Shown: piece after piece, positions 12,235-62,840 of the stretch
Numbering within the stretch: position 1 is the first letter of the stretch
How the letters are laid out: each line of letters begins with the position of its first letter
Origin: Malacoraja senta
Lineage: Eukaryota
Direction of reading: 5' to 3'
Length of the DNA: 64,000 bases
Assembly (NCBI GenBank): GCA_038087875.1
Contig: JAXLNO010002694.1
Location: forward strand, 186,001-250,000
Notes under the pieces: model-generated
Database searches by the model: none
Seen by the model: the letters and a program-made list of their open reading frames with translations, nothing else
Told to the model about the DNA's origin: nothing
Translations under genes and position numbers: made by a program

Positions 12235-15231
12235 TTAGGCAACCAGCACCGGCTGGTCAATGTCCAGGTGTGCCGGCTTCAAACGGTCAATCGACACTGC
12301 CTCCGGCCGGCCCCCCATGTCCAGGACAAAAGTCGACTGCCCGTGTTCCAGCACTCGGAACGGGCCCTCGTACGGCCTCTGGAGTGGCGTCCGGTGGGCA
12401 TCACGGCGCAGGAAGACGTACGGGCAGTCCCTGAGGGCTGATGGCACGTGTGGGCGAAATGTCCCATGGCGGGACGTCGGGATGGGTGCGAGCCTGCCAA
12501 CCTGCTCGCGAAGGCGCTTTAGGGTGGATGAGGGCGTTCCCTGCTGCCCCGGCGCCGACGGCACGAACTCCCCGGGCACCGTGAGTGGCGACCCGTAAAC
12601 GAGCTCCGCCGATGATGAGGCCAAGTCCTCTTTGGGAGCGGTCCGGATGCCCAGCATCACCCACGGCAACTCGTCCATCCAGTCTGGGCCGGAGAGTCGT
12701 GCCTTCAGTGCTGCCTTCAGCTGCCGGTGGAATCTCTCCACCAGACTGTTAGCTTGCGGGTAGTAAGCCGTGGTGTGGTGTAGCCGCACCCCCAGCAAGT
12801 GAGCCATGGCTGACCACAGCTCGGAGGTGAACTGTGGCCCCCGGTCTGAGGAGATGTGCGCTGGCACCCCGAAGCGAGCAATCCAGTGCGCGGACAACGC
12901 ACGAGCACACGTAACCGTTGAAGTATCGGTCAACGGAATGGCCTCCGGCCACCGCGTGAAGCGGTCCACCATTGTCAGAAGGTGGGTGATGCCCCGGGAT
13001 GGCGGGAGAGGGCCTACAATGTCTATGTGGAGATGGTCGAACCGCCGGTGAGGTAGACCAAACTCCTGGAGAGGCGCACGGACATGGCGCTGGATTTTTG
13101 CCGTCTGGCACGGAATGCAGGTGCGAGCCCAATGGCCAACCTGCTTGCGCAGACCGTGCCACATGAAACGAGCGGCCACTAGTGCCGTTGTCGCCCAGAT
13201 TGATGGGTGAGACAGTCCGTGGATCACCTCGAACACCCTCCGGCGCCAGGTGGCAGGGACGATGGGGCGCGGCTGACCGGACGACACATCGCACAGGATT
13301 GTCACTCCCCCAGGACCGAGAGGGACATCCTCAAGGCGGAGGCCGGAGATGGCAGTCCGGTAGGCGGGCACCTCATCGTCCGTGAGCTGTGCCGCCGCCA
13401 GAGCAGAATAGTCCACTCCGGGCGCCACCTCGAACACGGCGTTGATAGCGGGCCGGGACAATGCGTCGGCCACCCGGTTCTCTTTTCCCTTGATGTAGCA
13501 GATAGATGTCGTGTACTCCGATATGTAGGCCAATTGCCGCTGCTGTCGTGCGGACCAGGGATCGGAAACCTTCTGCAGGGCGAAAGTGAGCGGCTTATGG
13601 TCGGTGTAGGCGGTGAACGGGCGGCCCTCCAAGAAGTAGCGAAAATGGCGCACAGGCAGGTACAGAGCCAGGAGCTCACGATCGAACGCGCTGTACTTGG
13701 TCTGCGCACGGTTGAGGTGCCGACTGAAGAAGGCCAGGGGCCGCCAACCTCCGCCCGTCAGCTGCTCCAGCACAGCACCAACAGCCGGCTCCAAGGCGTC
13801 CACCGTGAGAGCAGTCGGGGCATCTCCCCGCGGGTGTACCAGCAGTACGGCCCGAGCAAGGGCCTCCTTCGCGCCGTCAAAAGCTGCCTCCGCCTCGTGG
13901 GTCCACTCCACGCTCTTGTGCTGCCCACCCGCCAGAAGTTGATACAGGGGCCGCATGATGTGGGCCGCGGATGGCACGAAACGATGGTAAAATGCCACCA
14001 TGCCAACAAATTCCTGCAGGTCACGCACCGTGCGTGGGCGGGGAAACCGACATATGGCGTCGACCCTGTCAGGCAGGGGAACCGCGCCTTGCGCAGTCAC
14101 GCGGTGGCCGAGGAAGTCAATTTCGCTCACCCCAAAACGGCACTTGTCCAGGTTGATGGCCAAACCATGCTCGCTGAGTCGCTGACAGCTGCCGAAGATG
14201 AGCGCAGTGTTCCTGTTGGAGCGGCTGGCCACCAGGATGTCGTCCAGGTACACGAACACGAAATCGAGGCCACGACAAACCCCGTCCATGAGGCGCTGAA
14301 AGGCCTGTGCAGCGTTTTTGAGGCCGAACGGCATCCGAGTAAACTCGTAAAGCCCGAATGGCGTGATGATCGCCGTCTTCGGCACGTCATCCGGGTGAAC
14401 CGGGATCTGATTATAACCCCGTACCAGATCCACTTTGGAAAATATTGTGGCCCCAGCCAAATGGGCCGTGAAGTCCTGGATGTGGGGTACGGGGTATCGA
14501 TCCGCTGTTGTTGCAGCGTTCAACTGTCGGTAATCCCCACAAGGTCGCCAGCCCCCGCTTGACTTGGAGACCATGTGGAGTGGGGACGCCCAAGGGCTGC
14601 TCGAAGGGCGGACGATCCCTAAGGCCTCCATCGTGCGGAATTCCCGCCGTGCCAGACACAGTTTATCTGGCGGCAGTCGCCGTGCTCGTGCATGGAGTGG
14701 TGGGCCGGTAGTCGGGATATAATGTAACACCCCGTGGCTGGGGGTTGCTGATTGAAACTGCGCATGGAGAATGTCCGGGAACGCAGCCAAGATCCGTGCG
14801 AATCGGGAGTCCACGGACGCCAGTGGCCGTCCCACCGGTTGATCCACACGCAACGTGATCGGCTCCATCGTAGTGGCGTTGATCAAACGCTGACGCCCGA
14901 CGTCCACCATGAGGGAATGCGCCCGGAGGAAATCGGCCCCGAGCAATGGTTGGGAGACATCAGCGATAGTGAACCACCACGAGAAATGACAGGAGCCGAG
15001 CACGATGGGAACCATGCGCAGTCCATATGTGCGGATGGGGCTGCCGTTCGCCGCGGTGAGGACGGGCCCCTGCTTACCGGAACGAATGTCGGCCAGCGAA
15101 GGGGGCAGGACGCTGAGCTCCGCTCCAGTATCCACGAGGAAGCGGGTCCCGGAGCGCCGATCCCAGGCGAAAAGGCGGTGAATTTGGCCGGCCGCCACGG
15201 GGACTATTGGCAGCCGGCCCAGGGGTTTCCC
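12235..15231 (-). CDS. pol: Gypsy Pol (PR-RT-RH-IN)
   Basis: [19 protein letters not shown], RNase H, HHCC, DDE and GPY/F motifs. About 11 codons after YLDD are scrambled by two compensating deletions. Confidence 0.9.
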
Positions 15232-16122
15232 GGGAACATGCACGGCTGGCTGCATTGTCGTGCTGCAGCACCCCAGAGCTGATGGTAGTAGCACCAGTTC
15301 CTCGTGTTGGTGCTACTTGGAGCTTGCCTGCTCCTGCTGGTGGTGCCTGCAGCCTGCTGACGCTGGACTGCAGGTGCAGTACGCCTCACTGCCGCTGGGG
15401 TTGATCGTACGGGCCGTCGGGCTGGAGCTGTCACTCCTTCCACCGCTCCCCCGCCCCACCGGAGGAAATCGGGAGCTGCTGGGGTGACGTCATCGGCGTG
15501 CCTGCTGACAGCCAGCGCGTTGACGTCATCAGGGCGCGTCGACCTCAGCGCGACCCCGTCTCTGCTGACGCCCAGCGCGCTGACGTCATCAGGGCGCGCC
15601 ATCCACAGGGCGTCGGCGCGCCTCCCGAGGGCCCGAAGGTCGGCAAACGAGACGTCGGTGAGCTGCAACCGAATGTAGGCCGGCAGCAGATGCAGGTAGG
15701 TATACTCAAACAACAGGCACGGCGTGTGCCCGTCTAGTAGCGCCACCATCTCCTTTAGGAGGGTAGATGGCCGTCGGTCGCCCAGGCCCCCCATATGCAG
15801 GATCCTACTTGCCCGCTCCATCCTACTCAGTCCGTAAATGTGGAGCAGGAGCTCTTTCAGGCCGAGGTATTTATCATCGTTCGGGGGGTCTGGCGAGGAA
15901 GTCCGTGACCTCTTCAACCGCATCCTGGTCGAGGGCTCCCACCAGGTAATAGAAGCGGGTGGCATCGACCGTGATGCCCCGCAGGTTGAACTGGGCCTCC
16001 GCCTGCTGGAACCAGATGAGCGGCCGGGTGGTGCAGAAGTTGGGCAGTTTCACGGAGACCGCGTCCAGAGACAGGGCCGGGCCAGCCTGTGAGGAGGTAG
16101 GGCTTTGTCCACTCTCCATCAT
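15204..16122 (-). pseudogene. gag: Gypsy Gag with one frameshift near 15885
   Basis: AVSVKLPNF..WFQQAEAQFNLRGIT in one frame. The remainder, with WCYYHQLWG knuckle and GGGAAAC slippery site (15231-15225), is in another. Confidence 0.85.
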
Positions 16123-36757: not shown

Positions 36758-36843
36758 TTACAATGCTCCAATGATCATCACAAGCGTAGCCATGAGCACC
36801 AGCATGGAACTAGCTCCAAATGCCTCATGTGACCCACCAACAC
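36758..36843 (-). CDS. Class I-like exon 5: linker and hydrophobic C-terminus ([28 protein letters not shown])
   Basis: CTAAT branch-like site and CAG acceptor (weak pyrimidine tract), phase 1. It is the only hydrophobic candidate exon I found downstream of alpha3 and sits in a unique island between repeats. Confidence 0.6.
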
Positions 36844-45800: not shown

Positions 45801-48800
45801 TGGAACCATTTGTTCTTGATTCCCTTACTCTGGTTAAAAGACTATGCATTTGCCTTATCTATTCCCCTCATGATCTTATACACCGCTGTAAGATCACCCC
45901 TCTGAGTCCTGCGCTCTAAGGAATAAAGTCCTAACCTGCCACACCTCTCCCTATAACTCAGGCCCCAAAGTCCTAGCAACATGCTCATCAATCTTCTCAG
46001 TACTCATTCCAGCTTAATGACACCCTTCCTATAGCAGGGTAATGGGGTGGAGCTGCTGTCTCACTGCACCAGAGACCCGGGTTCTATCCTGATACCTGGT
46101 GCCATCTGTGTGGCGTTTGCACATTCATCCTGTGACTGAGTGGGGTTTCTCCGGGTGCTCCGGTTTTGTCGAACACCCCAAAGACATGTGGGATTGCCCC
46201 CAGTGTGTAGGGAGTGGATGAGAAAGTGGGATAACACAGAACCAACGTGAGTGAGTTTAGTTGAGCTTGGCTTAGTGGTGTTTAGTATATTGTCTGAGAT
46301 ACAGTGAATGAAAAGCTTTTTGATGCATGATAAAGTCTGATTAAAGATAGTCCAAGGATTGGAGGAATGAATGATCAGTGGTCAGCGTGGACTGGGTAGG
46401 CAAAGGGCCTGTTTGCATGCTGGATCTGTCAATCAATTAAAAATGTTAAGTGTAAGAATTAACTGCAGATGCTGGTTTACACTGAAGATAGACACAAAAC
46501 GCTAGAGTAACTCAGCGGGTCAGGCAGCATCTCTGGAAAAAGTAATAGGTGATGTTTTGGGTCGAGACACTTCATCAAATTTTTGTCAAAAATATTTCTT
46601 ATTTTTGGGCTGTATATTTGACCGACAGCTCAAAGGAAAGTTAATTCTGGGACTCTAAGGAAAGTCAATGCCGGGAAACAGAGCATCCCATTGTAAGGAC
46701 TCACTGAGCTACCATGTAAATTGCATTCTGCCCCTCCCCAGTAGTTGTAGCCCCAGGCTGAGGAGCAGCAAGGACATTTTATTTCACAATGCACTATCCT
46801 TTTTGAAGATGGGATTTCCCCTTTATCATCCAGGTTCCTTCTGTTTGGCCCAAGCATCAGACTCCGTCTGAAGAAGGGTCTCGACCCATTCCTTCTCTCC
46901 AGAGATGCTGTCTGAGTTACTGCAGCTTTTTGTGTCTATCTTCGGTTTAAACCAGCATCTGCAGTTTCTTCCAGCCCTTTCAACACAGTTGCGGTGGCGC
47001 ATTGGTAGAGTTGCTGCCTTGTAGCGAATGCAGCGCCAGAGACCCAGGTTCGATCCCGATTAAGGGGGCTGTCAGTACAGAGTTTGTACGTTCTCCCCGT
47101 GACCTGTGTAGGTTTTCTCCGAGATCTTCGGTTTCCTCCCACATTCCAAAGACGTACATGTAGGTTAATTGGCTTGGTAAATGTAAAAATTGTCCCTAGT
47201 GGGTGTAGGATAGTATTAATGTGCGGGCATTGCTGGTCGGCGTGGGCCGAAGGGCCTGTTGCCATGCTGTATCTCTAAACTAGATTGCCCACATGTTTCA
47301 TGTGCCATAATGCTCCTGGATTCGAGGGTATTAACTGTAATGAGAGGTTGGACAAACTTGGATTGTTTTCTCTGGAACGTCAGAGGCTGTGTGTAGACAT
47401 GATACCAGTTTCTAAAATTATGACAGACATAGATTTGGTGGAGAGTGAGAATATTTTTTTTTTTCCAGCATGGAAATGACAAAGACTCGAGGGCATATCT
47501 TAAAGGTGAGAGGGACAGGCTTTAAAGGAGATGTGCGGAGCATGTATTTTTTTTTAAACATAGGGGAGTGGTGGGTGCCTGGAATGCACTGCCAGGGGCT
47601 GTGGTGGTGAGGCAGATGTGATAGAGGCATTTAGGAGGCTTTTGTATCAGCACATGGATATGCAGAAAATGGAGCTCTGTGGTTCACATGCAGGCAGAGG
47701 AGTTTAACTGGTATTGTATTGTATATCTTTATTGTCATTTCCTGAGTATTCGCATACCCAGAGGAAACAAAAAAAGGTTCCTCAACCAGTGTCCATTTCA
47801 GTGTGCAGTAAAAAATAAATAGAAGTAAAAATACATATATCATGAACAAATTAACACTCTACTCTACTAAACATCAACAGGCGTTCCGATCGGCAGCGGC
47901 ACGACAGTGGCTCTGCTGCAGTGTGTCCAGGTTGGTGGTTGGTGCACGATACTTTGGCAGGGGACAAAGTCCGTTTATCAGTCTTATAACCTGCGGGAAG
48001 AAGCTGAGGAGCATCCTGCTGGTTTTGCACCTAATGCTCCGGTACCTCTTCCCAGATGGCAGGATGAAGAATATGTGATGCGATGGGTGGTAGGGGTCTT
48101 TGATGATGGAGATGGCTCTGCTGATACATCTCTTCCTGTATATGTCCAGCAGGAAAGGGAGTGGAGCACCAATAATCCTGCTGGCGGTCTTCACAATCCT
48201 GTCTAGTTGGTGCCGTTCGTACGCCTTGCAGCTCCCGAACCAGGAAGTGATGCTGTAGGTTAATGTGCTCTCGATTGTCCCCCTATAAAAAGTTCGTAGG
48301 TGTGTAGTGGGGAGACCTGCTTTACGTAGTCTTCGGAGAGGGTGTAGTCGCTGCTGGACTCTCTTGACCAGTGCTGTGGTGTTGGTCGTGGACGTCAGGT
48401 CATCTGACAGGTGGAGTCCTAGGAACTTCACGCTGTTGACCCTTTCCACATCAGCTCCATCGATGTGCAGAGGTGTATGGTGTTGTTTTCCCGCCCTCCT
48501 GAAGTCAACCACCATCTCCTTAGTTTTTCCCACGTTGAGAATGAGGTTGTGGGATTTGCACCATCCTGTGAGCAGCTCCACCTCCATCCTGTATGCCGAC
48601 TCATCATTGTCACTGATGAGACCCACCACTGTTGTGTCATCAGCGAACTTGTTGATGAAGTTGTTGTTGAGTCTAGCAGTACAGTCGTGTGTTAGCAGAC
48701 TAAACAGCAGGGGGCTTAGGACACAGCCTTGGGGCGAGCCAGTGCTCACGGCTATGGTTTTTGATGTCCTACTGCCCACCCTGACTGTCTGCTGCCGTTG

Positions 48801-51800
48801 TGATAGGAAGTTCAGGACCCAGTTACATGTGCCAGCATCAACCCCCAATAGCTCCAACTTCTCCACCAGCTGCTGCGGAATGATTGTATTAAAAGCAGTG
48901 CTGAAGTCTATGAAGAGGATCCTGGCATAAGTATTTTTCCGATCAAGGTGTGACAGTACGAGGTTCAGTGTTGTTGAGACTGCGTCCTCTGTGGATCGGT
49001 TGGCTCTGTAGGCGAACTGCAGTGGGTCTAGGTCGGCAGGTAGACTATTTTTGATATGCTGCATAACCAGTCGCTCAAAACACTTCATTACTATGGGTGT
49101 TAGAGCCACTGGTCGAAAGTCATTATGGCAGGCTGGGTTTGGTTTCTTCGGGACAGGGACGATGGTGGCACTCTTAAGACAGTTGGGCACTACTGCCTGG
49201 CTGAGTGAGATGTTAAAAATGTCTGTTAAGACATCTTTCAGTTGCTGAAATATACGGTGGTATACGATACGATAGAAGTTTATTTATCCCAGGAGAGAAA
49301 TGGGATGGCCGACAGTCATAAAACACAACAAGATACATGAAACATGGAAGTGACGAGTGGAAAGGATTGGGGATGTTAAAAAACTGGGGATGGAGGGAGG
49401 GGGGATGGGGGAGGTTGAGTCAGTCTACCTTACGATAGAAGGGGGAGAAGTTATGGTTTGGAAGCCACAGGAAAAAAGGATCTGTGGTGTTCTGTACTGC
49501 ATCTTGGTGGAACTAGTCTGTTGCTGAAGGTACTTCTCAGGTTGACCAGTGTGTCATGGAGGGGATGAGCTGTACTGTCCAAGATGCTTCGCAATTTGAG
49601 GAACATCCCTCCAAGACCACTTCTCACGAATCCAACTCCGTCCCAAGGACGGAGCCAGCCTTCCCAGCACACGGCAGCGAACAAGACGGCACTGGCCACC
49701 ACCGATTGGTAGAACATCTGCAGCATCTTACTACAGACGTTGAAAGAGCATCATGTTCAGCATGGACATTGAGGGCTGAGGGCCTGTTCCTGTACTGTAC
49801 TGTTTTATGTTACATGTCATTCAAACCCCATTTGTTCCTTCCCCATAAATTACGGTGAATTCCCCAATACTCTGCCAGATTTCCATGAAAGATGCTCCGA
49901 GTCCACGCCGACCATCGGTCACCCGTTCACACTAAGCTCATAAGTCCTAGGAGCAGAATTAGGCCATTGGCCTACCAAGTCAACTCTGTCATTCAATCAT
50001 GGCTAATCTATCTTTCCCTCTTAACCCCAGTCTCCTGCCTTCTCCCCATAACCCCTGATACGCTTACTGATCAAGAATCTGTCAATCTCCGCCTTAAAAA
50101 TATCCATTGACGACTTCCACAGCCGTTTGTGGCAATGAATTCCACAGATTCACCACCCTCTGACTAAAGACATTCCTCCTCATCTCCTTCCTAAAGGCAC
50201 GTCCTTTTATTCTGAGAGTATGGCCTCTGGTCCTCAACTCTCCCACTAGTGGAAACATCCTCTCCACATTCACTCTATCCAGACCTTTCATAATTCAGTA
50301 AGTTTCAATGTGGTCCCCCCGCATCCATCTAAACTCCAGCGAGTACAGGCCCAGTGCCTTCAAACAGTCATCATATGTGAACCCAATCATTCCTAGAATC
50401 ATTCTTGTAATCCTCTTCTGGACCCTCTCCAATGCCAGCACATCCTTCTTCAGAGGAAGGGATGTTTCCTTAAAAATATCCATTGACGGCCTCCACAGCC
50501 TTCTGTGTCAATGAATTCCACAGATTCACCACCCTCAGCGTTCTCGTCGCGCCCCCCGTCAGTACCCAGGTTCGCCTGGGGAAGCCAATGATCCTTCCAG
50601 CAGACTAAATTCTACAAGACGATGCCTGAGAGCCAAGTCAAAGAATCCTAGTCATTATCCCAAAGCCGAAAGCAGCAACAACGACCAGCCTCAAGAGCAC
50701 CTAGCAGTTGGACCTGCTCTCCGAATACTACAGCTGAATATTGAAGGCCTCTCTGCAGACATCTTCAACCCACCCACTGCTCGACTTCCATCTAGACGAC
50801 CAATTTGGAAGAACCCACCACCAGCTGATTTCACCACCCAATCAGCTTGAATAAAGGAATGGGAGTCCAAGGACGTCCCAAATAAACATCTGGTGTCAGA
50901 CCCAACACTACCGGTCCCTGGCACCAATCTCCCAAGGAAGCAGTGGACGACGCTGAATAGATTCAGGACTGGACATGGCCCCTGCTTGGCCAGCCTTATC
51001 AAGAGGCAACTGCTTGGCTAAAGGACTTTGCATTCGCTAAATAAATAAATAACCACCCTCCGACTAAAGAAATTCCTCATCTCCTTTCTACAAGCAGGAG
51101 TGAAGCAGATTGTGGACAACATGCAGTGACTTACCTCCCCTCAGTGTCATTGTCAGAATCTCTGACAGGCTGCTGTGCTGGACCTGACAGCTGTACATAT
51201 TCAGATCTTGGCCGTGTAGCTCGATGAGCAGTTCCATCCTGTACGTGTCATCGTGGTTTGGTAGAAGGGTCTCGTTTATGTCATTGGAGACGGCCTGCCC
51301 ATTCCTCAGCCAAGTGGCGTTGATGGCGCGGGGGTAAAAGGGAGTGATGACACACCGGAGACTCTCGCCTTTGTCAGCCATCGGCTCCCTTTTCAACACT
51401 GTCACCCCTGGAACAACTGGGGAAGAATGGAGAGTAACGTCACTAATTTAAACCAGAGGACATTATCTTACAGATGGAGATTATGCACACCAGCCTTGCT
51501 GTCTCACCGTTTCACTCACAAACTAGTTAGCTCGTTCAGGAAACATAGTGGAGTACATGCCCCACTCAGTATCAATGGTGCCAAAGTAGAAATGGTTCAG
51601 ATCTTCAAGTTCCTTGGCATTAATATTACCAACGATCTATCACAGACCAACCACATTGATACGGCAGCCAAGGAGGCACACCAACGCCTCTACTACCTTA
51701 GGAGACTCAGGAAATTTGGCATGACTCCAATGATTCTTACAATCCTCTGCAGAAGCTCCATACTGTCACTGCTTGGATTGGGAACAGCTCTACCCAAGAC

Positions 51801-54800
51801 CACAAAAATTGTAGATGTAGCCCAGACCATCACACAGACCAGACTCCCCATCACTGACTCCACCTACATTTCACGCTGCCACAGAAAAGCAGCCAACACA
51901 ATCAAAGACTTGTCCCACCCCCGGTCATTCCATCTTCTCCCTGCTCCCGTCGGGCAAATGGTACAGAAGCTTGAAAGCTAGCACCACCACCACCTCTGCT
52001 ACCAGGCTTCTGAGCGGTCCTTCCATAAGCTAGGGTACTGTCCAATTCACCTCTACCCCATTGGATTCTGTCTATTGGACTGATGAACTGTATCTTCCCC
52101 TTAGCACTATCTATTGTACTTGAGTTTAACTTTATTATATTTATGTCCAGTATAATCTGATCTATCTCTCCCTCCTCACCCCATTCTCCTGCCTTCTCCC
52201 CATAACCTCAGACACCCGTACTAATCACTGGAATTTAGAAGGATGAGAGGGGATCATGTAGAAACATATAAAATTATAAAAGGACTGGACAAGCTAGATG
52301 CAAGGGAGTCCAGAACCAGGGGCCACAGTCTAAGAATAAAGGGGAGGCCATTTAAAACTGAGATGAGAAAAAACTTTGTCACCCAGAGAGTTATGAATTT
52401 GTGGAATTCTCTGCCACAGAAGGCAGTAGAGGCCAATTCACTGGATGAATTTAAAAGAGAGTTAGATAGAGCTCTAGGGGCTAGCGGAATCAAGGGGTAT
52501 AGGGAGAAGGCAGGCACGCGTTACTGATTGTGGATGATCAGCCATGATCACAATGAATGGCGGTGCTGGCTCAAAGGGCACCTATTTTCTATGATTCTAA
52601 TCAAAAAACTGTCTATCTCTGCATTTTTAAAAAATCCACTGAATTGGCTTCTACAGCCGTCTGTGGCAAAGAATTCCTCTGATCATCACCCTCTGATTAA
52701 ATACATTTCTCCTCATCTCCTTCCCAAAAGAACATCCTAGGAAGCGATGACTAGTCCTAGACTCTCCCACCAGTGGAAACATCCTCTCCATGTCCACTCT
52801 ATCCATGCCTTTCACTGTTCTGCATGTTTAAATGAGGTCCCTCCTCATTCTTCTAAACTCCAGCGAGTACAGGCCCAGTGCCGGCAAATGGTCATCATCG
52901 ATTAACCCACTCACTCCTGGGATCAATTTTGTCAACCTCCTCTGGACCCTCTCAAGAGCCAACACATGCCCAAAATTGCTCACAATTGATCAGCAAATCG
53001 CTTGCCATCCCAGGTCAAAAATTCCCTTTTTGCCCCTGATCAGCATTGCCCCAGAAATCCCTCACCAACCCAGATCAGGAACCATTACAATCCTGGACCA
53101 GGTTATCATTCACTGTCCAGAGAAGGAGATCTCTCACCATCAGATCATAAGCTCCCTCACCGTCCTAGATCATAGATCCCTCATTGCCCCAGATCAGAAG
53201 GCCTCTGACAATTCTGGATCACGATATAATTTACTGTCCAGACCGGGAGATTCTTCGCTGTCCAGACCAGGAGATCTCTCACCACCAAGTCAGTGGATAT
53301 ATTTAAGGAAGTGATAGATAGATGTTCAAGAAGGAACTGCAAATGCTGGAAAATCGAAGGTAGACAAAAGTGCTGGAGAAACTCAGCGGTTGCGGCAGCA
53401 TCCATGGAGCGAAGGAAGTAGGCAACGTTTCGGAAGAAAGGGTTCTGAATTCTGAAGAAGGGTCTCGGCCCGAAATGTTGCCTATTTCCTTCGCTCCATA
53501 GATGCTGCCGCACCCGCTGAGTTTTTTCCAGTACTTTTGTCTACCAGTGATAGATTCTTAATTAGTATGGGTGTCAGAGGTTATGGGGAGAAGGCAGCAG
53601 AATGGGGTTAGCAGAGAAAGATAGATCAGCCATGATTGAGTGGTAGAGTAGACTTGATGGGCCGAATGGCCTAATTCTGCTCCTATCACTGATGATCTTG
53701 ATCAGAAGCTCCCTCACCATCCGCGATTGGGAAATCATCCCAGATCAGTGCTCCCTCACCATCATGGATGGGAGCTCCTTTGTTGTCTGGGTCAAGAGAC
53801 ACCTCACAGTCCCAGAGTGGAAGCTCCCTCACCACACTATATCGGAGCTCCCTCACCTCCCTGGATCAGAGCTCCCGCTCCGTCACACACAGGGGCTTAA
53901 GTACTGAGAAGCCCTACCTACCTCTCCTCTCGAGTGCTGCGTCACCAAGCCGAAGAGCTTTCTGTAAGTCTGGAATGCAGCTGTTGTTCACTGCTTGAAC
54001 TGCAGCATTATTAAAGAAAATCTGTTGGTTGATTGGATCGTTCAATAATTTAAGGATACCAGTGGCAGAACAGTTCACTGCGACCAGATCACAGTCAATC
54101 TCACCGAGGTCTTGGATGGCAAACTTTACAAACAGATGGGTCATATTTTCAGACTGTGTGCAGCCCCAAAGCCCCTGGAAGTAGCTGATACCTGTAAAGA
54201 AGCAATTGTCATTAATGAGAAGCCATTGCCTACTGTAGATTGGTTATTGCATGTGAACCAATCATAGTAGAGTAGCATCACTAACCCCACCTTACTGTAT
54301 GATTTATATTAACACCCACTTCCTACATTAAGTAGTCTTGGAAGCGGTAGTGATGAATTAACAACTAACAACCTGCTGTACCGCTATACTATGTGTTGCA
54401 ATTAAAGATGACTTAATCATATGTGTAACATAATCATTTACACCTACCAAACACGGAAATGCGACATGCACTGTGTGACCACGAGATGCAGGGAGCAGCA
54501 GACTGTAGTGATGGAATGATGCTAGAGCAGGGGCTGAGGATGGAGTGAATGCAGCATTGTCGGTGGTGGTACAGCACACAGTGTCTCAAACAATCTGTGA
54601 TCACGGTGAGCAAATGTGTACAGTCAGGGTGAGTGGGTACACAGGGGAATGATCATGGCGAGGGGCTGTGTGTGCACTCACATCCTTGTATGCAGAGCAG
54701 GGGATCAAATAGGAGAGGGTGTACCGTGCATCATTGTGGACAGAGTAGGGGATAACAGTGAGGTGGTGTACTGTGGATCAGGGTGTGTATAGAGGAGGGG

Positions 54801-57800
54801 ATTACAGTGAGATGATGTGCATTGCATCATTGAAATTCTAATTGTAATTAATTTATTCGCCAAGTATGTAAAAACATGCAAAGAATTTGATTTGCCATTC
54901 AGTCATACCAAAAAAGCAACAAGACACATAAAACAACATAAAAAGTAACATAAACATCCACCACTGTGATGGGATGGAAGGCAATAGCGTATTATCTTCT
55001 TTCCTGCTTTTCTCTCGCGGTCGGGGCAGTCGAACCATCCGCAGTCGGGGTGATCGAAGCTCCCGCGTCGGAGCGATTGAAACTCCTGTGGTTTGAGCTC
55101 CCGAAGTCGATCCCTAACCAAGAGACCGTCAGCTGCACGATGTTAGGCCGCAGTGTGGACGGATTTACGATACGGAAAAAGTTGCATCTCCGACGAGGAA
55201 AGAGACAATAAATGTTTCCCCCACCCCCCACATAATTTACACAACGGACTAAAAACAACAAAAGAAGAAAAGGACAACACAGACGTGGCAAGGCTGCCAT
55301 CGTACATCGTTAATCCATTGCGTGTATAATGCAGGGGATAGTGAGAGATGGTGTACTGTGGATCAGTTTATACAGTGCAGGGGATAGTGAGAGATGGTGT
55401 ACTGTGGATCAGTATGGGCAAAGCAGGGGATCACAGTGAGATGGTTTACTGTGGATCAGTATGGGCAAAGCAGGGGATCACAGTGAGATGGTTTACTGTG
55501 CATCAGTGTGGGCAAAGCAGGGGATCAGTGAGATGGTTTACTGTGCATCAGTGTGCATAGAGCAGGGATTACAGTGAGCGATGATGTACTGTGCAGGCGA
55601 TAGTGAGAGAGAGTGTACTGTGCATCATCGTGGGCAGAGAAGGGAATCACAGTGAGAGATGGTGTACTGTGGATCAGTTTATACTGCAGGGGATCACAGA
55701 GAGATAGTGTACTGTGCATCTGTTTCTACAGTGCAGGGGAATCACAGTGAGAGATGGTGTAGTGTGCATCAGTGTGTGTATAGAGCAGGGCGATCGCATT
55801 GAGACCGAAGTTGTCGGCACAGCGGCAGAGTTGCTGCCTTTTACAGTGTCAGAGACCCGGGTTTGATCCTGACAATGAGTGCAATGGGTACACTGTACAG
55901 AATTTGTACATGCTCACTATGACCACGCGGGTTTTCTCCGGGTGCCTCCGGTTTCCTCCCATATTCCAAAGCAGGGAAAGGAATTTCTGCTGCTTCATCA
56001 GATCCATCTGATAGCGGTTATTTTGGCAACGTGAAATTTACTGTGAGCCTGAGAGGTGAGAGGAGGACAAACACCTACCAAGCATTAGGCCAAATAAACT
56101 AAATTGTTTAGACACAATCGTGTGAATGGTGTCTGCGATCTCCTTCTGCCGTATCCAGTACTCAGCCGTGAAGCCGTTCGCAATCCACTGCTGCCTGGAT
56201 GCCACTTCTTCGAGGGAGTTGTCGTAGTAATCTATCTGCAGATCATCCAACATCCCAACCCTGGCGAAGGCTGGCAGGTCAGGAACACTGAGGGAGTAGG
56301 TGCCGAAATATATCAAGCTGTGGGAATCTGAGCAAAGGACACAAGGGAAGAGTGTTAGAAACAGACCAAACAAAAAGGTCGAATGCCCAGAGAATACCCA
56401 ACGGCTGAAGGGCGGCACGGTGGTGTAGCAGTAGAGCTACTGCTTTACAGCGCCAGAGACCCAGGTCCAATCCTGTCTGTACGGAATTTGTACGTTCACC
56501 CCGTGACCTGCGTGGGTTTTCTCCGATATCCTCGGTTTGGTCCCACCATCCAAAGACGGACAGGTTTGTAGGTTAATTGGCTTGGTATAAATATAAAATG
56601 ATCCCTAGTGTGTGTAGGGTAGTCTTAATGTACGGGGAATCGCTGGTCGGTGCAGACCCGGTGCCTCGAAGGGCCTGTTTCTACGCTGTATCTCTAAACT
56701 AAACTAAACCTCCAGAGCCTGATGGAATAGGTTAGGGTTTAGATTTATCATCGTCACGTGTACCAAGGTACAGCAAAAAGTTTTGTTTTGTATGCTATGC
56801 AAACAGACCAGACATACTATAGATAAATAAAATTAATTCAAGTTGAGTACAACAGATAGAGCATAGGGGAAAATGCTGAAAATATGGTTTAGACTTTACG
56901 TTTTAGAGATATAGCCCTTTTAGGAAACAGTCCCTTCGGCCCACTGTGTCTGTGCCGACCAGCAATCACCCCATACACTAGCAGTACCCTACATGACAGT
57001 ATCCTATTTTCAATTTTACCAAAGCCAATTAACTGACAAACTGAAGCACCCGAAAAATACCCACGTGTTTTCAGGGAGAACGTACAAACTCTGTACAGAC
57101 AGCACCCGTAGTCAGTCTCTGGCGCTGCAAGGCAGCAGCTCTACCGCTTCGCCACTCTTCCCAGCATTGATGTAATAAAAAGGAACTGCAAATGCTGGTT
57201 TATACCAAAGATAGACAGAAAATTGCTGGAGTAACTCAGCATATCAGGGAGCATCTCTGGAGAAAATGGATGGTGATGTTTCGGGTTGGGACCCTTCTTT
57301 AGACTGATTGTAAGTGGAGTGGGGGGGGGGGGGACTGGAAGAAAGAAAACACCAGGACAAATCAGGGCTGGCAACATATGACCTCAGGTATACAAAAGTG
57401 CTGGAGAAACTCAGCGAGTGCAGCAGCATCTATGGAGCGAAGGAAATAGGCAACGTTTCGGGCCGGAACCCTTCTTCAGACGTTGAGCTTCAGCGGGAGT
57501 CTGAAGAAGGGTTTCGGCCCGAAACGTTGCCTATTTCCTTCGCTCCATAGATGCTGCTGCACCCGCTGAGTTTCTCCAGCACTTTTGTCTACCTTCGATT
57601 TTCCAGCATCTGCAGTTCCTTCTTAAACATATGACCTCAGGCAGGGTGGTTCCCTGATAGGCCAAATGTTGGCAAGAATGGTCTATCTTTAGTTCTTGGC
57701 ATTGACAAGCAAGAATTTCATTGTCCTATCTGGGACACGTGACAATAAAACTCTCTTGACTCTTGACTCTCTTGTAAGTGTAACAGTTTCATGAACAAAG

Positions 57801-60800: not shown

Positions 60801-62840
60801 AGGCAAAGGTGGGTGAAGTGTCTTGCCCAAGGACACAACGACAGTATGCACTCCAAGCGGGATTCGAACCGGCTACCTTCCAGTTGCCAGCCGAACACTT
60901 AGCCCATTGCGCCATCTGTCGTCAACAATAGACAATAGGTGCAGGAGTAGGCCATTCGCCCCATCGAGCCAGCACCGCCATTCACTGTGATCGTGGCTGA
61001 TCATGATAGGAAAGGTTTAGAGGCATATAGGCCAAATGCGGGCAGGTGGGACTAACTTAGATGGGACATCTGAGTTGACATGGACCAGTTGGACTGAAGG
61101 ACCTGTTTCTGTGCTGTTTGACTCTTTGACTCTAAAGGAAGCATTTTAAGAAATGGGTTAGGGTTAGAGTTAAGAATGGTCTTGACCCAAAATGTCACCC
61201 ATTCTCTCCAGAAATGTTACCTGTCCCGCTGAGTTACTCCAGCTTTTTGTGTCTCTTTTGAAGAAATGACCAGCCATGCTACCATGTTAAATTAAATTGG
61301 TAATTAGGCCCAGACAGGATCATGGATAAAATGAACCATCCGTGCCCCGGGAGATGTGATGAAACTGTTAGTATGTTGCATCCCAGTGTGAATAGAGTCC
61401 TCCCCCCAGTGCATGCAGAGCACTGCTTGCCCAGTTCATCCCACTGACAGCGTCTAGGTCTCACACTGACACACTGACTGAACACTTAATCTCTGTCAGT
61501 CAGTGCACCATAACCTCTGACCAACCTCTCGAAAATGCACAGCCCACTAACAGTGCAGCAATCCCTCGATCCCGATCTGACCATGTTACGCTCCCACATC
61601 AGACACTGGGCAGTGTAAAGCTCCCTCAATACTCAGCCACAACACAACACAAGGTCATAACCTGCCCGAACCACCCACTCTAGCCCCTTAGATAGACACA
61701 AAATGCTGGAATAACTCAGCGGGACAGGCAGCATCTCTGGAGAGAAGGAATGGGTGACATTTTGAGTCAAGATCCATCTTCACACCCGAAACATCACCCA
61801 TTCAGAGATGCTGCCTGTCCCGCTGAGTTACTCCAGCATTTTGTGTCTATCTTCGGTTTAAACCAGCAACTGCAGTTCCTCCCTACACTCTAGTCTAGCC
61901 CCTTCTTCCTCATCCCTCATACTCTGAATTGAATTGAAAGCTAGTTATTCGGCCCATCGAGTTGATACTGTCCATTGATCATCCGTTTACAGTAGTTCTA
62001 TGTTATCCCACTTTCTCAACCACTTAACCAATTAACCTACAAACCCGCACGTCTTTGGTGTCTAAAAAACAAAGATAAGAGAATGGACAGGCAATGTTTC
62101 GGATTGGGACCCTTCTTAGAATCATACTGCACAGAAACAGACCATTCGACCAAACTCGTCCATGCCATGACGACCAAGATGAGCCATCTAAGCTATTCCC
62201 ATTTGCCCGCATTTGATCCATATCCCTCTCAACCTATCCTACCCTCGCATCTGTCCATATCTCTTTTAAATGCTGTTACTGATTCTGCCTCACCTACCTC
62301 CGCAGTCTGAAGAAGGGTCTCGACCCAAAACGTCACCCGTTCCTTCTCTCCAGCGATGCTGCCTGTCCCGCTGAGTTACTCCAGCATTTTGCGTCCACAG
62401 TTTAAACCGGCATCTGCAGTTTCTTCCTACATACTTCCTCTGGCAACTCATTCCGTGCACCCACCACCATCTGAGTGAAAATGTTGCCCCTCAGGTTCCT
62501 ATTAAATCTTTCCCCTCTCACCTTATGACTTCTGGTTCCCGATTTCTACCTCCGCAGTCTGCCTCATCTACCTCCGCAGTCTGAAGAAGGGTTTCGGCCC
62601 GAAACGTTGCTTATTTCCTTCGCTCCATAGATGCTGCTGCACCCGCTGAGTTTCTCCAGCATTTTTGTGTCCCTCCACGGCTGCTGCCCGACCCGCTGAG
62701 TTTCTCCTGTTACTTTCTCGAAGTAACAGGAGAAACATTCGCTGCCACACAACCACTGTCTTACCTGCGTGGTCTCCCGATACAGAGCACAGAGACAAGA
62801 CGGCGATCAGGAGTGATACAGGTACATTGTAACTTTCCAT
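36758..62840 (-). CDS. Divergent (non-classical) MHC class I-like heavy chain, 5 coding exons, 320 aa: join(62840-62765, 56327-56079, 54191-53922, 51416-51135, 36843-36758)
   Basis: The exons join into one open frame with phase-1 GT-AG introns. Kozak GCCGCCAAGATGG, signal peptide, alpha1 SHSLIYF/YYD/RQQW/EYW, alpha2 GC...CIPDL, alpha3 IgC1 [27 protein letters not shown]. Exon 5 is less certain than exons 1-4. Confidence 0.85.
38096..38362 (-). mobile_element. HE1-type SINE
   Basis: Reverse complement of the HE1-like consensus seen at 56411. Confidence 0.75.
40687..41910 (+). pseudogene. DIRS gag-like ORF1 (broken)
   Basis: [35 protein letters not shown] motif, placed between the ITR and RT. 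Confidence 0.6.
41936..43650 (+). pseudogene. DIRS RT-RNase H (stops, frameshifts and a LINE insertion)
   Basis: [40 protein letters not shown] and [15 protein letters not shown] motifs. Confidence 0.9.
42895..43176 (+). mobile_element. 282-bp 3' end of an I/Nimb-like LINE inserted in the DIRS RT
   Basis: 14-bp TSD AATGCTGTTTCTGA (42881-42894, 43177-43190), [10 protein letters not shown] knuckle remnant and (GAA)n tail. Confidence 0.7.
43644..44054 (+). pseudogene. DIRS adenine-methyltransferase-like domain
   Basis: [25 protein letters not shown] and [13 protein letters not shown] motifs. Confidence 0.8.
44040..44990 (+). pseudogene. DIRS tyrosine recombinase (broken)
   Basis: [26 protein letters not shown] catalytic motifs spread over several frames. 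Confidence 0.8.
46811..46821. promoter_or_regulatory. Consensus NF-kB site in a unique intronic island
   Basis: GGGATTTCCCC matches GGGRNWYYCC. Two GGAAAGT half-sites at 46635 and 46659. Motif match only. Confidence 0.25.
46988..47284 (+). mobile_element. HE1-type SINE
   Basis: GGTGGCGC..GGTAGAG head, GGTTCGATCC B-box and CTCTAAAC tail. Confidence 0.8.
47712..49245 (-). mobile_element. 5'-truncated Rex/Babar LINE with an uninterrupted RT ORF (47874-49190, 438 aa)
   Basis: [47 protein letters not shown] motifs and a (CAATA)n tail. Confidence 0.9.
49262..49745 (-). mobile_element. Rex/Babar-type LINE 3' fragment (second subfamily)
   Basis: [18 protein letters not shown] and HPLH...[12 protein letters not shown] motifs. 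Confidence 0.7.
49950..51090 (-). mobile_element. CR1 3' fragments, interrupted by a Vingi-like element
   Basis: [14 protein letters not shown] and [11 protein letters not shown] motifs. Confidence 0.75.
50537..51051 (+). mobile_element. Internally deleted non-autonomous Vingi/Ingi-like LINE
   Basis: 9-bp TSD ACCACCCTC. The 5' part [12 protein letters not shown] (APE start) is joined to the C-terminal [13 protein letters not shown]. The stop codon overlaps the (TAAA)n tail. Confidence 0.6.
51135..51416 (-). CDS. Class I-like exon 4 (alpha3, IgC1 domain, 282 nt)
   Basis: ttcttccccag acceptor, G|gtaagt donor, C-x-W-x-C Ig core, FYP and LPNHDDTY motifs. Confidence 0.92.
51427..52130 (+). mobile_element. 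Rex/Babar LINE 3' fragment
   Basis: PLSING..VE.V..FKFLG..ITNDLS and [13 protein letters not shown] motifs. Confidence 0.8.
52225..52540 (+). mobile_element. CR1 3' fragment
   Basis: [10 protein letters not shown] and [12 protein letters not shown] motifs. Confidence 0.8.
52990..53880. repeat. Degenerate short tandem repeats (CCAGATCAG.AGCTCCCTCACC-like), interrupted by SINE/pLTR inserts
   Basis: The motif recurs at about 53040-53285 and 53695-53875. Confidence 0.5.
53320..53545. repeat. Foldback pLTR-derived insertion with 10-bp TSD
   Basis: Arms about 53360-53433 and 53470-53544. TSD AGTGATAGAT (53310-53319, 53546-53555). Confidence 0.8.
53922..54191 (-). CDS. Class I-like exon 3 (alpha2, 270 nt)
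   Basis: tgcttctttacag acceptor, G|gtaggt donor, YFQGLWGC...[18 protein letters not shown]. Confidence 0.85.
54842..55301 (-). mobile_element. Unclassified SINE-like / non-autonomous retroelement
   Basis: CpG-rich body beginning GATGGCAGCC and ending AATAAATTAATTACAATT. Family not identified. Confidence 0.4.
55325..55790. repeat. Minisatellite, about 10 copies of a ~46-bp unit
   Basis: GCAGGGGAT.(AC)AGTGAGA(GA)TGGT.TACTGTG(G/C)ATCAGT units start at 55331, 55377, 55423, 55470 and onward. Confidence 0.85.
56079..56327 (-). CDS. Class I-like exon 2 (alpha1, 249 nt)
   Basis: CTAAC branch point, pyrimidine tract and cag acceptor, G|gtaggt donor. [26 protein letters not shown]. Confidence 0.9.
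56411..56709 (+). mobile_element. HE1-type tRNA-derived SINE, full length
   Basis: GGCGGCACGGTGG head and GGGCCTGTTTC..CTGTATCTCTAAACTAAAC tail. Confidence 0.85.
57389..57625. repeat. Foldback pLTR insertion with two inverted hammerhead-like cores and a 16-bp TSD
   Basis: 90-bp arms 57392-57481 and 57499-57588 (2 mismatches) with a 17-nt spacer. TSD AACATATGACCTCAGG. Confidence 0.9.
59445..59962 (-). mobile_element. CR1/HER1 3' fragment
   Basis: [36 protein letters not shown] motifs. Confidence 0.9.
60177..60460 (-). mobile_element. HE1-type SINE
   Basis: Reverse complement of the 56411 family. Confidence 0.8.
60571..60923 (-). mobile_element. tRNA-derived SINE (second family), near-identical to 35847-36173
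   Basis: 8 substitutions and one 10-bp indel between the copies, by manual alignment. Confidence 0.85.
62581..62612 (+). ncRNA. Minimal hammerhead-like motif in a pLTR fragment
   Basis: CTGAAGA-AGGGTTTCGGCCC-GAAACGTT. Confidence 0.5.
62765..62840 (-). CDS. Class I-like exon 1 (signal peptide [25 protein letters not shown], 76 nt)
   Basis: GCCGCCAAGATGG Kozak context, hydrophobic core, G|gtaaga donor, phase 1. Confidence 0.85.

What the first reader, a model, noticed from the sequence alone, without database searches (positions are those of the whole stretch)
53922..54191. alpha2 domain has lost all peptide-anchoring residues and gained a second Cys pair
By manual alignment to HLA numbering (C101/C164 anchors) the changes are Y123>E, T143>N, K146>I, W147>N, Y159>A and Y171>A, with a Pro at 145. 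The YDG motif is replaced by IQD. New cysteines at about 126 and 133 (the latter replacing the conserved W133) face each other across a beta-hairpin and could form an extra disulfide. Three N-glycosylation sequons (NMT, NCS, NNS) are present. This indicates a non-peptide ligand or a closed groove.
Basis: partly seen in the sequence, partly recalled or inferred. Interest (0 to 1): 0.72.

Follow-up and report, generated by a model that had tools for sequence, protein, structure and literature searches.

The report
Skate UFA class I alpha2 exon
The stretch is the alpha2 exon of an intact skate copy of UFA, an already described shark-and-ray MHC class I-like gene thought to hold lipids rather than peptides. 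Its lost peptide anchors and extra cysteine pair are real but are traits of the whole lineage.

Summary
Window 53922-54191 (minus strand) is a clean phase-1 exon for the alpha2 domain of an intact five-exon, 320-residue MHC class I-like gene spanning 62840 to 36758.

Y7 and Y59 in alpha1 are kept.

The gene is the skate orthologue of UFA. Its best solved relative in all three domains is 8GM8, "shark nonclassical MHC class I, UFA". That is the only PDB chain the alpha2 exon matches.

The extra Cys pair occurs in 22 of 28 UFA sequences, including every shark and skate. AlphaFold places the two cysteines as direct cross-strand partners of a beta-hairpin. One stingray paralogue clade deleted the second cysteine and then replaced the orphan twice.

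Groove positions are 63% hydrophobic. Two papers cite unpublished work, in one case naming crystal and mass-spectrometry data, that UFA is CD1-like or lipid-binding. Lipid binding and the disulfide were not measured here.

This is a new member of a known kind. The scan already met this gene on this window (last exon, s1-140239).

Side observation: skate UFA evolves at dN/dS of about 1.2 and looks polymorphic in Leucoraja-cluster transcripts.

The parts
62765..62840 (-). Exon 1: ATG and signal peptide (25 codons + 1 base), GT donor at 62764-62763
   Evidence: tblastn of ray UFA N-termini hits 62840-62766. Sequence read. Joins in frame to alpha1 and matches the A. radiata leader.
56079..56327 (-). 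Exon 2: alpha1 domain (249 nt). Keeps Y7 and Y59, has no N86-type sequon, and its helix face is hydrophobic
   Evidence: Pfam MHC_I 1.2e-7; 8gm8 1.9e-16.
53922..54191 (-). Exon 3: alpha2 domain (270 nt), the finding itself
   Evidence: 8gm8 is the only PDB hit, 2.4e-13; no Pfam hit at E<=1.
54160..54162 (-). Cys94 (HLA C101), canonical alpha2 disulfide partner
   Evidence: Invariant in the family.
54091..54093 (-). Cys117 (HLA position 126), first new cysteine, in strand 3 of alpha2
54070..54072 (-). Cys124 (HLA W133 position), second new cysteine, in strand 4. It is the middle residue of the NCS sequon
53977..53979 (-). Cys155 (HLA C164), canonical partner on the alpha2 helix. It is preceded by the NNS sequon (N152 codon 53988-53986)
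51135..51416 (-). Exon 4: alpha3 Ig C1-set domain (282 nt)
   Evidence: C1-set 4.7e-15; 8gm8 6.6e-26.
36758..36843 (-). Exon 5: short stalk plus hydrophobic C-terminus with no cytoplasmic tail (GPI-signal layout), stop TAA 36760-36758
   Evidence: The same end occurs in A. radiata and Leucoraja-cluster proteins and in ray and shark UFA.

Best explanation
The exon encodes the alpha2 half of the ligand-binding platform of the skate orthologue of UFA. UFA is an old elasmobranch non-classical MHC class I lineage.

Shown here:
- The gene is intact, with five exons, 320 residues and a GPI-type tail.
- It is orthologous to shark UFA, whose crystal structure is 8GM8.
- It lacks the five alpha2 residues and position 84 that classical class I uses to clamp peptide termini.
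- It carries a lineage-wide second cysteine pair.

Inferred:
- Cys117 and Cys124 form a cross-strand disulfide that staples the strand 3 / strand 4 hairpin of alpha2, at the spot where classical molecules have the conserved W133.
- Bulky aromatic and charged pocket residues (Y159, Y171, W147, K146, W167) are replaced by Ala, Asn, Ile and Asp, and the alpha1 helix face is aliphatic. Together these would make a greasy groove that takes a lipid or other hydrophobic ligand rather than a peptide.
- The protein sits on the cell surface by a GPI anchor and shows that ligand to a T-cell or NK-type receptor.
For: Gene model and intact ORF.

UFA identity:
- 8gm8_A is the top PDB sequence hit for alpha1 (1.9e-16), alpha2 (2.4e-13, the only hit) and alpha3 (6.6e-26).
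- The family profile scores 8gm8 at 2.1e-123, against 9.8e-50 for UGA and 1e-43 or weaker for everything else.
- Foldseek's top hit is 8gm8, titled shark nonclassical MHC class I, UFA.
- The ML tree puts the window with Amblyraja and the Leucoraja cluster (100/100) inside batoid UFA, with sharks as the other half.

Anchor loss: HMM alignment to 5h5z, with partial agreement from 6a2b, and the family table.

Disulfide:
- DSSP of the AF2 models gives strands 29-34 and 39-42 in the window's alpha2, with Cys at 33 and 40. In the orthologue the strands are 113-118 and 123-126, with Cys at 117 and 124. In both models the two cysteines are registered partners.
- The pair is present in 22/28 sequences.
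- A single clade lost it through a 4-residue deletion of the second Cys. The orphan first Cys was then replaced by L in one subclade and N in another.

Hydrophobic groove: 63% hydrophobic and 11% charged at 35 pocket positions.

Lipid claim: PMC10751288 and PMC12562908.

Expression: spliced mRNA contigs of the Leucoraja-cluster orthologue with the same exon joins.
Against: - No coordinates were available, so neither the S-S distance nor the groove volume was measured.
- Lipid binding of UFA is known to me only from one statement of unpublished data and one personal communication.
- By sequence and fold the protein is no closer to CD1 than to classical class I, MR1, ZAG or HFE. HFE, which has a narrowed groove, is among the best fold matches.
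- dN/dS between skates is about 1.2-1.3, which by itself could mean relaxed constraint.
Confidence: 0.8

Rival explanations
1. It is a ligand-free, closed-groove class I-like molecule, in the manner of HFE, MIC or ULBP, ZAG-like scaffolds or FcRn. It would act only as a surface ligand for an NK or T-cell receptor. The hydrophobic residues would pack against each other rather than around a lipid.
For: Anchor loss alone does not tell an empty groove from a lipid groove. HFE and MICB are among the top Swiss-Prot fold matches. GPI anchoring and fast evolution of the helices are typical of NKG2D-ligand-type molecules (my own knowledge).
Against: Two papers report that UFA is CD1-like or lipid-binding. 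Many large pocket residues are replaced by Ala, Gly or Ser (positions 155, 156, 159, 171, 97), which opens space rather than fills it. The helix lengths in the AF2 models are normal.
Confidence: 0.12
2. It is a decaying gene. The odd alpha2 residues would then be neutral drift in a locus no longer under selection in skates.
For: dN/dS is 1.16-1.34 between the three skates. Exon divergence is 61 differences over the roughly 948 aligned coding sites counted, about 6.4%. That is at least as high as intron mismatch of about 5.6%.
Against: - The ORF and all eight splice sites are intact here and in A. radiata.
- Spliced full-length mRNAs exist in the Leucoraja cluster.
- About 6 indels are expected in the CDS from the intron rate, but only one, in frame, is seen. 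P(<=1) is 0.015 and P(no frameshift) is about 0.007.
- P(no stop) under random substitution is 0.06-0.16.
- The odd residues are shared with sharks, so they long predate skates.
- The alpha3 domain shows purifying selection within the Leucoraja cluster, with piN/piS of 0.09.
Confidence: 0.04
3. It still presents peptides, in an unconventional way, using the retained Y7 and Y59 for the N-terminus and an open C-terminal end.
For: Y7 and Y59 are kept in nearly all batoid UFA.
Against: Y159 and Y171, the other half of the A pocket, and the whole F pocket set (84, 143, 146, 147) are gone in every UFA sequence. Sharks vary even at Y7 (H, S, N, Q).
Confidence: 0.04

Closest known systems
Nurse shark UFA (PDB 8GM8, 'Crystal structure of shark nonclassical MHC CLASS I, UFA', released 2024-11-27; same sequence as P0035)
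   Same: Best match in all three extracellular domains, at about 45% identity over 265 residues. Same four alpha2 cysteines: 94/118/125/156 in 8GM8 and 94/117/124/155 here. Same loss of T143, K146, W147, Y159 and Y171. The other full-length shark and ray UFA proteins have the same tail-less hydrophobic C-terminus; 8GM8 itself is a 265-residue ectodomain construct with no tail to compare.
   Different: Skate alpha2 is one residue shorter in the first loop. Its sequons differ: NCS and NNS are present here, while the nurse shark has NTT only. Many helix residues differ. The orthology spans the shark-batoid split.
Shark UGA (PDB 9CH4, released 2026-03-18)
   Same: Second-best solved relative of the family profile (9.8e-50) and of alpha1 (3.5e-11). 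Also reported as CD1-like (PMC12562908).
   Different: The window's alpha2 gives no sequence hit to it at E<=10. UGA keeps a Trp near the W133 position and has no second Cys pair in the aligned hairpin.
CD1 family (tetrapods)
   Same: Proposed function: a hydrophobic groove for lipids with no peptide anchors (literature). The groove positions are hydrophobic.
   Different: It is not a closer relative than other class I molecules. CD1c scores 6.2e-31 and chicken CD1 1.7e-29, against 1e-43 to 1e-33 for classical class I, MR1 and ZAG. No CD1 appears among the top 50 PDB or top 30 Swiss-Prot fold matches. There is no cytoplasmic tail, so it has no tyrosine-based endosomal sorting motif of the CD1 kind (the motif is my own knowledge).
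Classical class I (shark UAA 6LUP, carp 5H5Z, HLA-A)
   Same: Domain order, exon phases, the C101-C164 disulfide, Y7, Y59 and the C1-set alpha3.
   Different: Six of eight terminus-binding residues are lost. The alpha1 end is shorter by 4 residues, which removes the N86 sequon. It has an extra Cys pair and a GPI-type end.

Membership tests
UFA lineage (elasmobranch MHC-Ib) | Closest solved or named relative is shark UFA, across alpha1, alpha2 and alpha3 | tested here: met
   8gm8_A is the top hit for each domain, for the family profile and by fold.
UFA lineage (elasmobranch MHC-Ib) | Groups with shark and ray UFA sequences in a tree that follows the species tree | tested here: met
   The window, Amblyraja and the Leucoraja cluster group at 100/100 inside the batoid half, with sharks in the other half. 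The tree had no outgroup, so it is rooted at the midpoint only.
UFA lineage (elasmobranch MHC-Ib) | Second cysteine pair in the alpha2 hairpin (HLA positions 126 and 133) | tested here: met
   Present here and in 22/28 family members, including 8GM8. Whether it is a defining feature in the authors' sense is not published.
UFA lineage (elasmobranch MHC-Ib) | Tail-less hydrophobic C-terminus (GPI-signal layout) | tested here: met
   The last exon 36843..36758 ends in 16 hydrophobic residues after small residues, with no cytoplasmic tail. The anchor itself was not tested.
UFA lineage (elasmobranch MHC-Ib) | Maps in the MHC-Ib cluster with UDA and UEA (PMC10751288) | not tested
No other host gene was found in this window.
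UFA lineage (elasmobranch MHC-Ib) | Binds lipid | not testable with these tools
   Literature statements only.
Classical peptide-presenting class I | Eight conserved terminus-binding residues: Y7, Y59, Y/R84, T143, K146, W147, Y159, Y171 | tested here: not met
   Only Y7 and Y59 are kept. The others are M, N, I, N, A and A.
CD1 | Sequence or fold closer to CD1 than to other class I families | tested here: not met
   CD1 ranks below classical class I, MR1 and ZAG in the profile search. It is absent from the top fold matches.
CD1 | Hydrophobic ligand groove | tested here: inconclusive
No cavity was measured.

The most novel reading that the evidence does not exclude
In skates, UFA may be a polymorphic, fast-evolving lipid-type presenter and not a quiet monomorphic CD1 analogue. 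Its alpha1 and alpha2 platform would be under diversifying selection, with old allelic lineages, while the disulfide-stapled core is held fixed.

The evidence so far:
- dN/dS is 2.3-2.5 in alpha1 and 1.0-2.5 in alpha2 between the window's species and each of the other two skates, and 1.4 and 0.8 between those two.
- Exons diverge no more slowly than introns, yet frame and splice sites are kept.
- The Leucoraja cluster has 42 protein variants.
- Silent diversity within that cluster is 3.7%.
- Within the cluster, alpha1 has 10 non-synonymous segregating codons to 1 synonymous, against 4 to 8 in alpha3.
Probability: 0.22. Interest if true: 0.6.

Novelty: new member of a known kind. Interest (0 to 1): 0.3.

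Why it matters
UFA is offered in the literature as evidence that lipid-type antigen presentation is as old as jawed vertebrates. This locus adds an intact skate orthologue with a full gene model.

It shows that the anchor loss and the second cysteine pair are ancestral to sharks and batoids. It also gives evolutionary evidence that the two cysteines work as a pair: one was deleted and the orphan was then replaced twice.

For the scan, the finding is explained and is not a new kind of molecule. The one open thread worth a specialist's time is the fast protein evolution and apparent polymorphism of skate UFA, which is not what one expects of a CD1-like gene.

Tried and rejected
- **AlphaFold on the whole window protein.** The spliced 320-residue sequence has no reference and I did not type it. 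I folded the 84%-identical A. radiata orthologue instead and the window's alpha2 exon alone.
- **Coordinates.** The structure tools return none, so Cys-Cys distance, cavity volume and groove width could not be measured. No beta2m complex could be modelled.
- **Read laying.** It was closed, so splicing and expression in this species were not checked. The look-up of sequencing runs gave only one weak RNA holder (share 0.13) and one full holder of unknown kind.
- **Protein searches.** The word-indexed search with a ray protein missed the skates. Adding the window's exon translations as alignment rows found them. The window's own protein is not in that collection.
- **Pfam.** It does not recognise the alpha2 exon at E<=1.
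- **Papers.** Searches for the primary UFA paper, for '8GM8' and for a second disulfide in CD1 gave nothing useful. A remembered extra disulfide in CD1b is therefore not used as evidence.
- **Pseudogene reading.** Considered and rejected on ORF, splice-site, indel and transcript evidence.
- **Second UFA copy in the window.** None was found by tblastn.

Full report
**1. What is at the coordinates**

Read on the minus strand, 54191..53922 is a 270-nt exon. An AG lies at 54193-54192 and a GT at 53921-53920. Both borders are phase 1, as in class I genes generally. It translates without a stop into a 90-residue alpha2-type domain.

It is one of five exons that join in frame:
- leader, 62840..62765;
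- alpha1, 56327..56079;
- alpha2, 54191..53922;
- alpha3, 51416..51135;
- a last exon, 36843..36758, that ends in a hydrophobic stretch with no cytoplasmic tail.

The spliced product is 320 residues with no stop. Pfam recognises alpha1 as MHC_I (1.2e-7) and alpha3 as C1-set (4.7e-15). It does not recognise alpha2 at all at E<=1, which shows how far that domain has moved. tblastn with ray relatives finds only this one copy in the window.

The other large ORFs I scanned are either retroelement parts or have no Pfam match: gypsy-type pol ORFs at 12235-15294 and 3041-4669, and a LINE reverse transcriptase at 47874-49190 inside the last intron.

**2.

I built a profile from 30 family rows and let HMMER align it to solved chains. 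Against the carp classical class I chain 5h5z, the alignment is gapless from the first strand to the end of alpha2, apart from one loop residue.

- YDG(118-120) > IQD
- Y123 > E
- L126 > C
- W133 > C
- T143 > N
- K146 > I
- W147 > N
- Y159 > A
- Y171 > A
- Pro at 145

The alignment to 6a2b agrees on the cysteines, the first new Cys and Y159/Y171. It puts W133 one column off and leaves T143/K146/W147 in an indel-rich stretch.

The four alpha2 cysteines are mature residues 94, 117, 124 and 155. The three sequons are N99 (NMT), N123 (NCS) and N152 (NNS).

The claim needs one trim. In alpha1, Y7 and Y59 survive, while position 84 is Met. So two of the eight classical terminus-binding residues remain.

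**3. What gene it is**

The alpha2 exon has exactly one sequence match in the whole PDB, 8gm8_A (2.4e-13). The same chain is the top hit for alpha1 (1.9e-16) and alpha3 (6.6e-26).

Foldseek with the AlphaFold model names it: "Crystal structure of shark nonclassical MHC CLASS I, UFA", released 2024-11-27. Next comes 9ch4, "UGA". The family profile scores UFA at 2.1e-123, UGA at 9.8e-50, and everything else at 1e-43 or weaker.

The nearest proteins are:
- an Amblyraja radiata protein, 84% identical, which NCBI's pipeline calls "MR1-like";
- a 90%-identity cluster that includes a Leucoraja erinacea protein, 81% identical.

So the window comes from a third skate. The A. radiata gene has the same five exons, of 76, 249, 270, 270 and 86 nt, spread over 28 kb. 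Its introns are collinear with the window's at about 91-93% identity.

An ML tree of 27 family members splits into a shark half and a batoid half. It puts the window with the two other skates at 100/100.

An earlier agent of this scan had reached the same name from the last exon alone (s1-140239). I re-derived that exon and its join independently.

**4. The second cysteine pair**

All ten shark sequences, all three skate sequences and most ray sequences carry both cysteines, 22 of 28 in total.

AlphaFold models were made for two sequences:
- the window's own alpha2 (pLDDT 81.5);
- the A. radiata ectodomain (pLDDT 80).

DSSP on the first gives strands 29-34 and 39-42, with Cys at 33 and 40. On the second it gives strands 113-118 and 123-126, with Cys at 117 and 124. 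In both, the two cysteines are registered partners across a hairpin with a four-residue loop. This geometry allows a cross-strand disulfide. If the loop-closing pair is hydrogen-bonded, they sit at the non-hydrogen-bonded position that such disulfides prefer. That last point is inference.

No coordinates are returned by the tool, so no distance was measured.

Evolution gives a second line of evidence. The pair was lost once, in one clade of five stingray paralogues (100/98 support). A four-residue deletion removed the second cysteine. Of the five, one still has the orphan first cysteine, two have Leu and two have Asn, in separate subclades. Replacing an orphan twice is what one expects if the two were bonded.

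UGA (9ch4) has no such pair and keeps a Trp near position 133.

**5. The groove**

At the 35 positions that line the HLA pockets (the list is from my own knowledge), the window's protein is 63% A/V/I/L/M/F/W/C and 11% charged. The nurse shark UFA also gives 63%.

The alpha1 helix face reads I, A, I, I, V, L, F, M at positions 66, 67, 70, 73, 74, 80, 81 and 84. On the alpha2 helix, the big residues Y159, Y171, W147 and W167 are A, A, N and D.

Two papers speak to function. [quoted passage not shown] PMC12562908 says crystal and mass-spectrometry analyses suggest lipids like those of CD1d, as a personal communication.

"Closed groove" stays as a minor rival because I could not measure a cavity, and HFE is among the best fold matches.

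UFA is CD1-like in proposed function only. CD1 ranks below classical class I, MR1 and ZAG by profile. It is absent from the top fold matches.

**6. Sequons**

- NMT is unique to this species; Amblyraja has NMI and the Leucoraja-cluster representative has NMN.
- NCS is limited to skates.
- An N-x-S/T just before C164 recurs in about 15 of the 28 sequences listed, across skates, rays and sharks.
- The classical N86 sequon is gone. The alpha1 end is four residues shorter than in carp class I.

**7. Is the gene alive?**

Between the three skates, dN/dS is 1.16-1.34 overall. It is 2.3-2.5 in alpha1 for the window's species against each of the other two, and 1.4 between those two. Exon divergence between the window and A. 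radiata is 61 differences over the roughly 948 aligned coding sites counted, about 6.4%. That is no lower than intron mismatch of about 5.6%.

Taken alone, this could be decay. The other evidence argues against it:
- The ORF and all splice sites are intact in two genomes.
- Full-length spliced mRNA contigs exist for the Leucoraja cluster.
- About six indels are expected in the CDS from the intron rate, but only one is seen, and it is in frame. P(<=1) is 0.015 and P(no frameshift) is about 0.007.
- P(no stop) under random substitution is 0.06-0.16.

Within the Leucoraja cluster there are 42 protein variants. Six CDS give piS of 0.037 and piN of 0.015. Segregating codons are 10 non-synonymous to 1 synonymous in alpha1, against 4 to 8 in alpha3 (Fisher p = 0.009). 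piN/piS is 0.09 in alpha3.

This looks like diversifying selection on the platform with constraint on the Ig domain. There are caveats. The contigs may mix alleles. Paralogues or sister species cannot be excluded. The counts are small.

**8. Verdict**

The object is a new member, a skate orthologue, of a known lineage whose structure has been in the PDB since 2024.

Noticed in passing
window 62840-36758 (CDS) compared with L003 (A. radiata) and L001 (Leucoraja-cluster mRNA): Skate UFA orthologues differ at dN/dS of 1.16-1.34 overall. In alpha1 it is 2.3-2.5 for the window's species against each of the other two, and 1.4 between those two. Exon divergence of about 6.4% is not below intron mismatch of about 5.6%. 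Yet frame, splice sites and cysteines are all kept.
   Followed up: partly
L001, L004-L008 (Logan mRNA contigs); proteins P0029, P0038-P0051: The 90%-identity cluster around the Leucoraja erinacea UFA protein holds 42 full-length variants. Six CDS give piS of 0.037. Segregating codons are 10 non-synonymous to 1 synonymous in alpha1, against 4 to 8 in alpha3. This suggests polymorphism focused on the platform. Alleles, paralogues and assembly chimeras were not separated.
   Followed up: partly
proteins P0018-P0021, P0023 (Hemitrygon akajei, Hypanus sabinus): One stingray paralogue clade lost the second alpha2 cysteine through a 4-residue deletion. The orphan first cysteine was then replaced independently by Leu and by Asn, and one member still keeps it.
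   Followed up: yes
proteins P0001, P0009-P0023: UFA-type genes are multi-copy in stingrays, mantas and sawfish. There are at least 6 distinct proteins each in Hemitrygon akajei and Mobula birostris, and 2 in Pristis. The papers call UFA single- or low-copy. Only one copy was found in this window, and each skate source contributed a single protein or 90% cluster to the searches.
   Followed up: partly
window 51416-51135 compared with L003 22049-22318: The alpha3 exon is 282 nt here and 270 nt in A. radiata and the Leucoraja cluster. Rays have the longer form. So the 4-codon loss is shared by those two skates, and the window's species branches outside them.
   Followed up: partly
(source names): Automatic names for UFA orthologues are inconsistent: MR1-like, HFE homolog, CD1d-like, CD1c-like, ZAG-like, RT1/RLA/Gogo class I-like, and even class II beta-like. 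Database names give no guide to this lineage.
   Followed up: no
window 12235-15294, 3041-4669, 47874-49190: There are gypsy-type LTR retroelement pol ORFs: one with protease, RT, RNase H and integrase, and one with RNase H and integrase. A LINE-type reverse transcriptase ORF lies inside the 14.3-kb last intron of the UFA gene.
   Followed up: partly
window 53986-53988 (N152) and family alignment A3: An N-x-S/T sequon immediately before the C164-equivalent cysteine, on top of the alpha2 helix, recurs in skates, rays and several sharks. The classical N86 sequon is absent from the whole lineage.
   Followed up: partly
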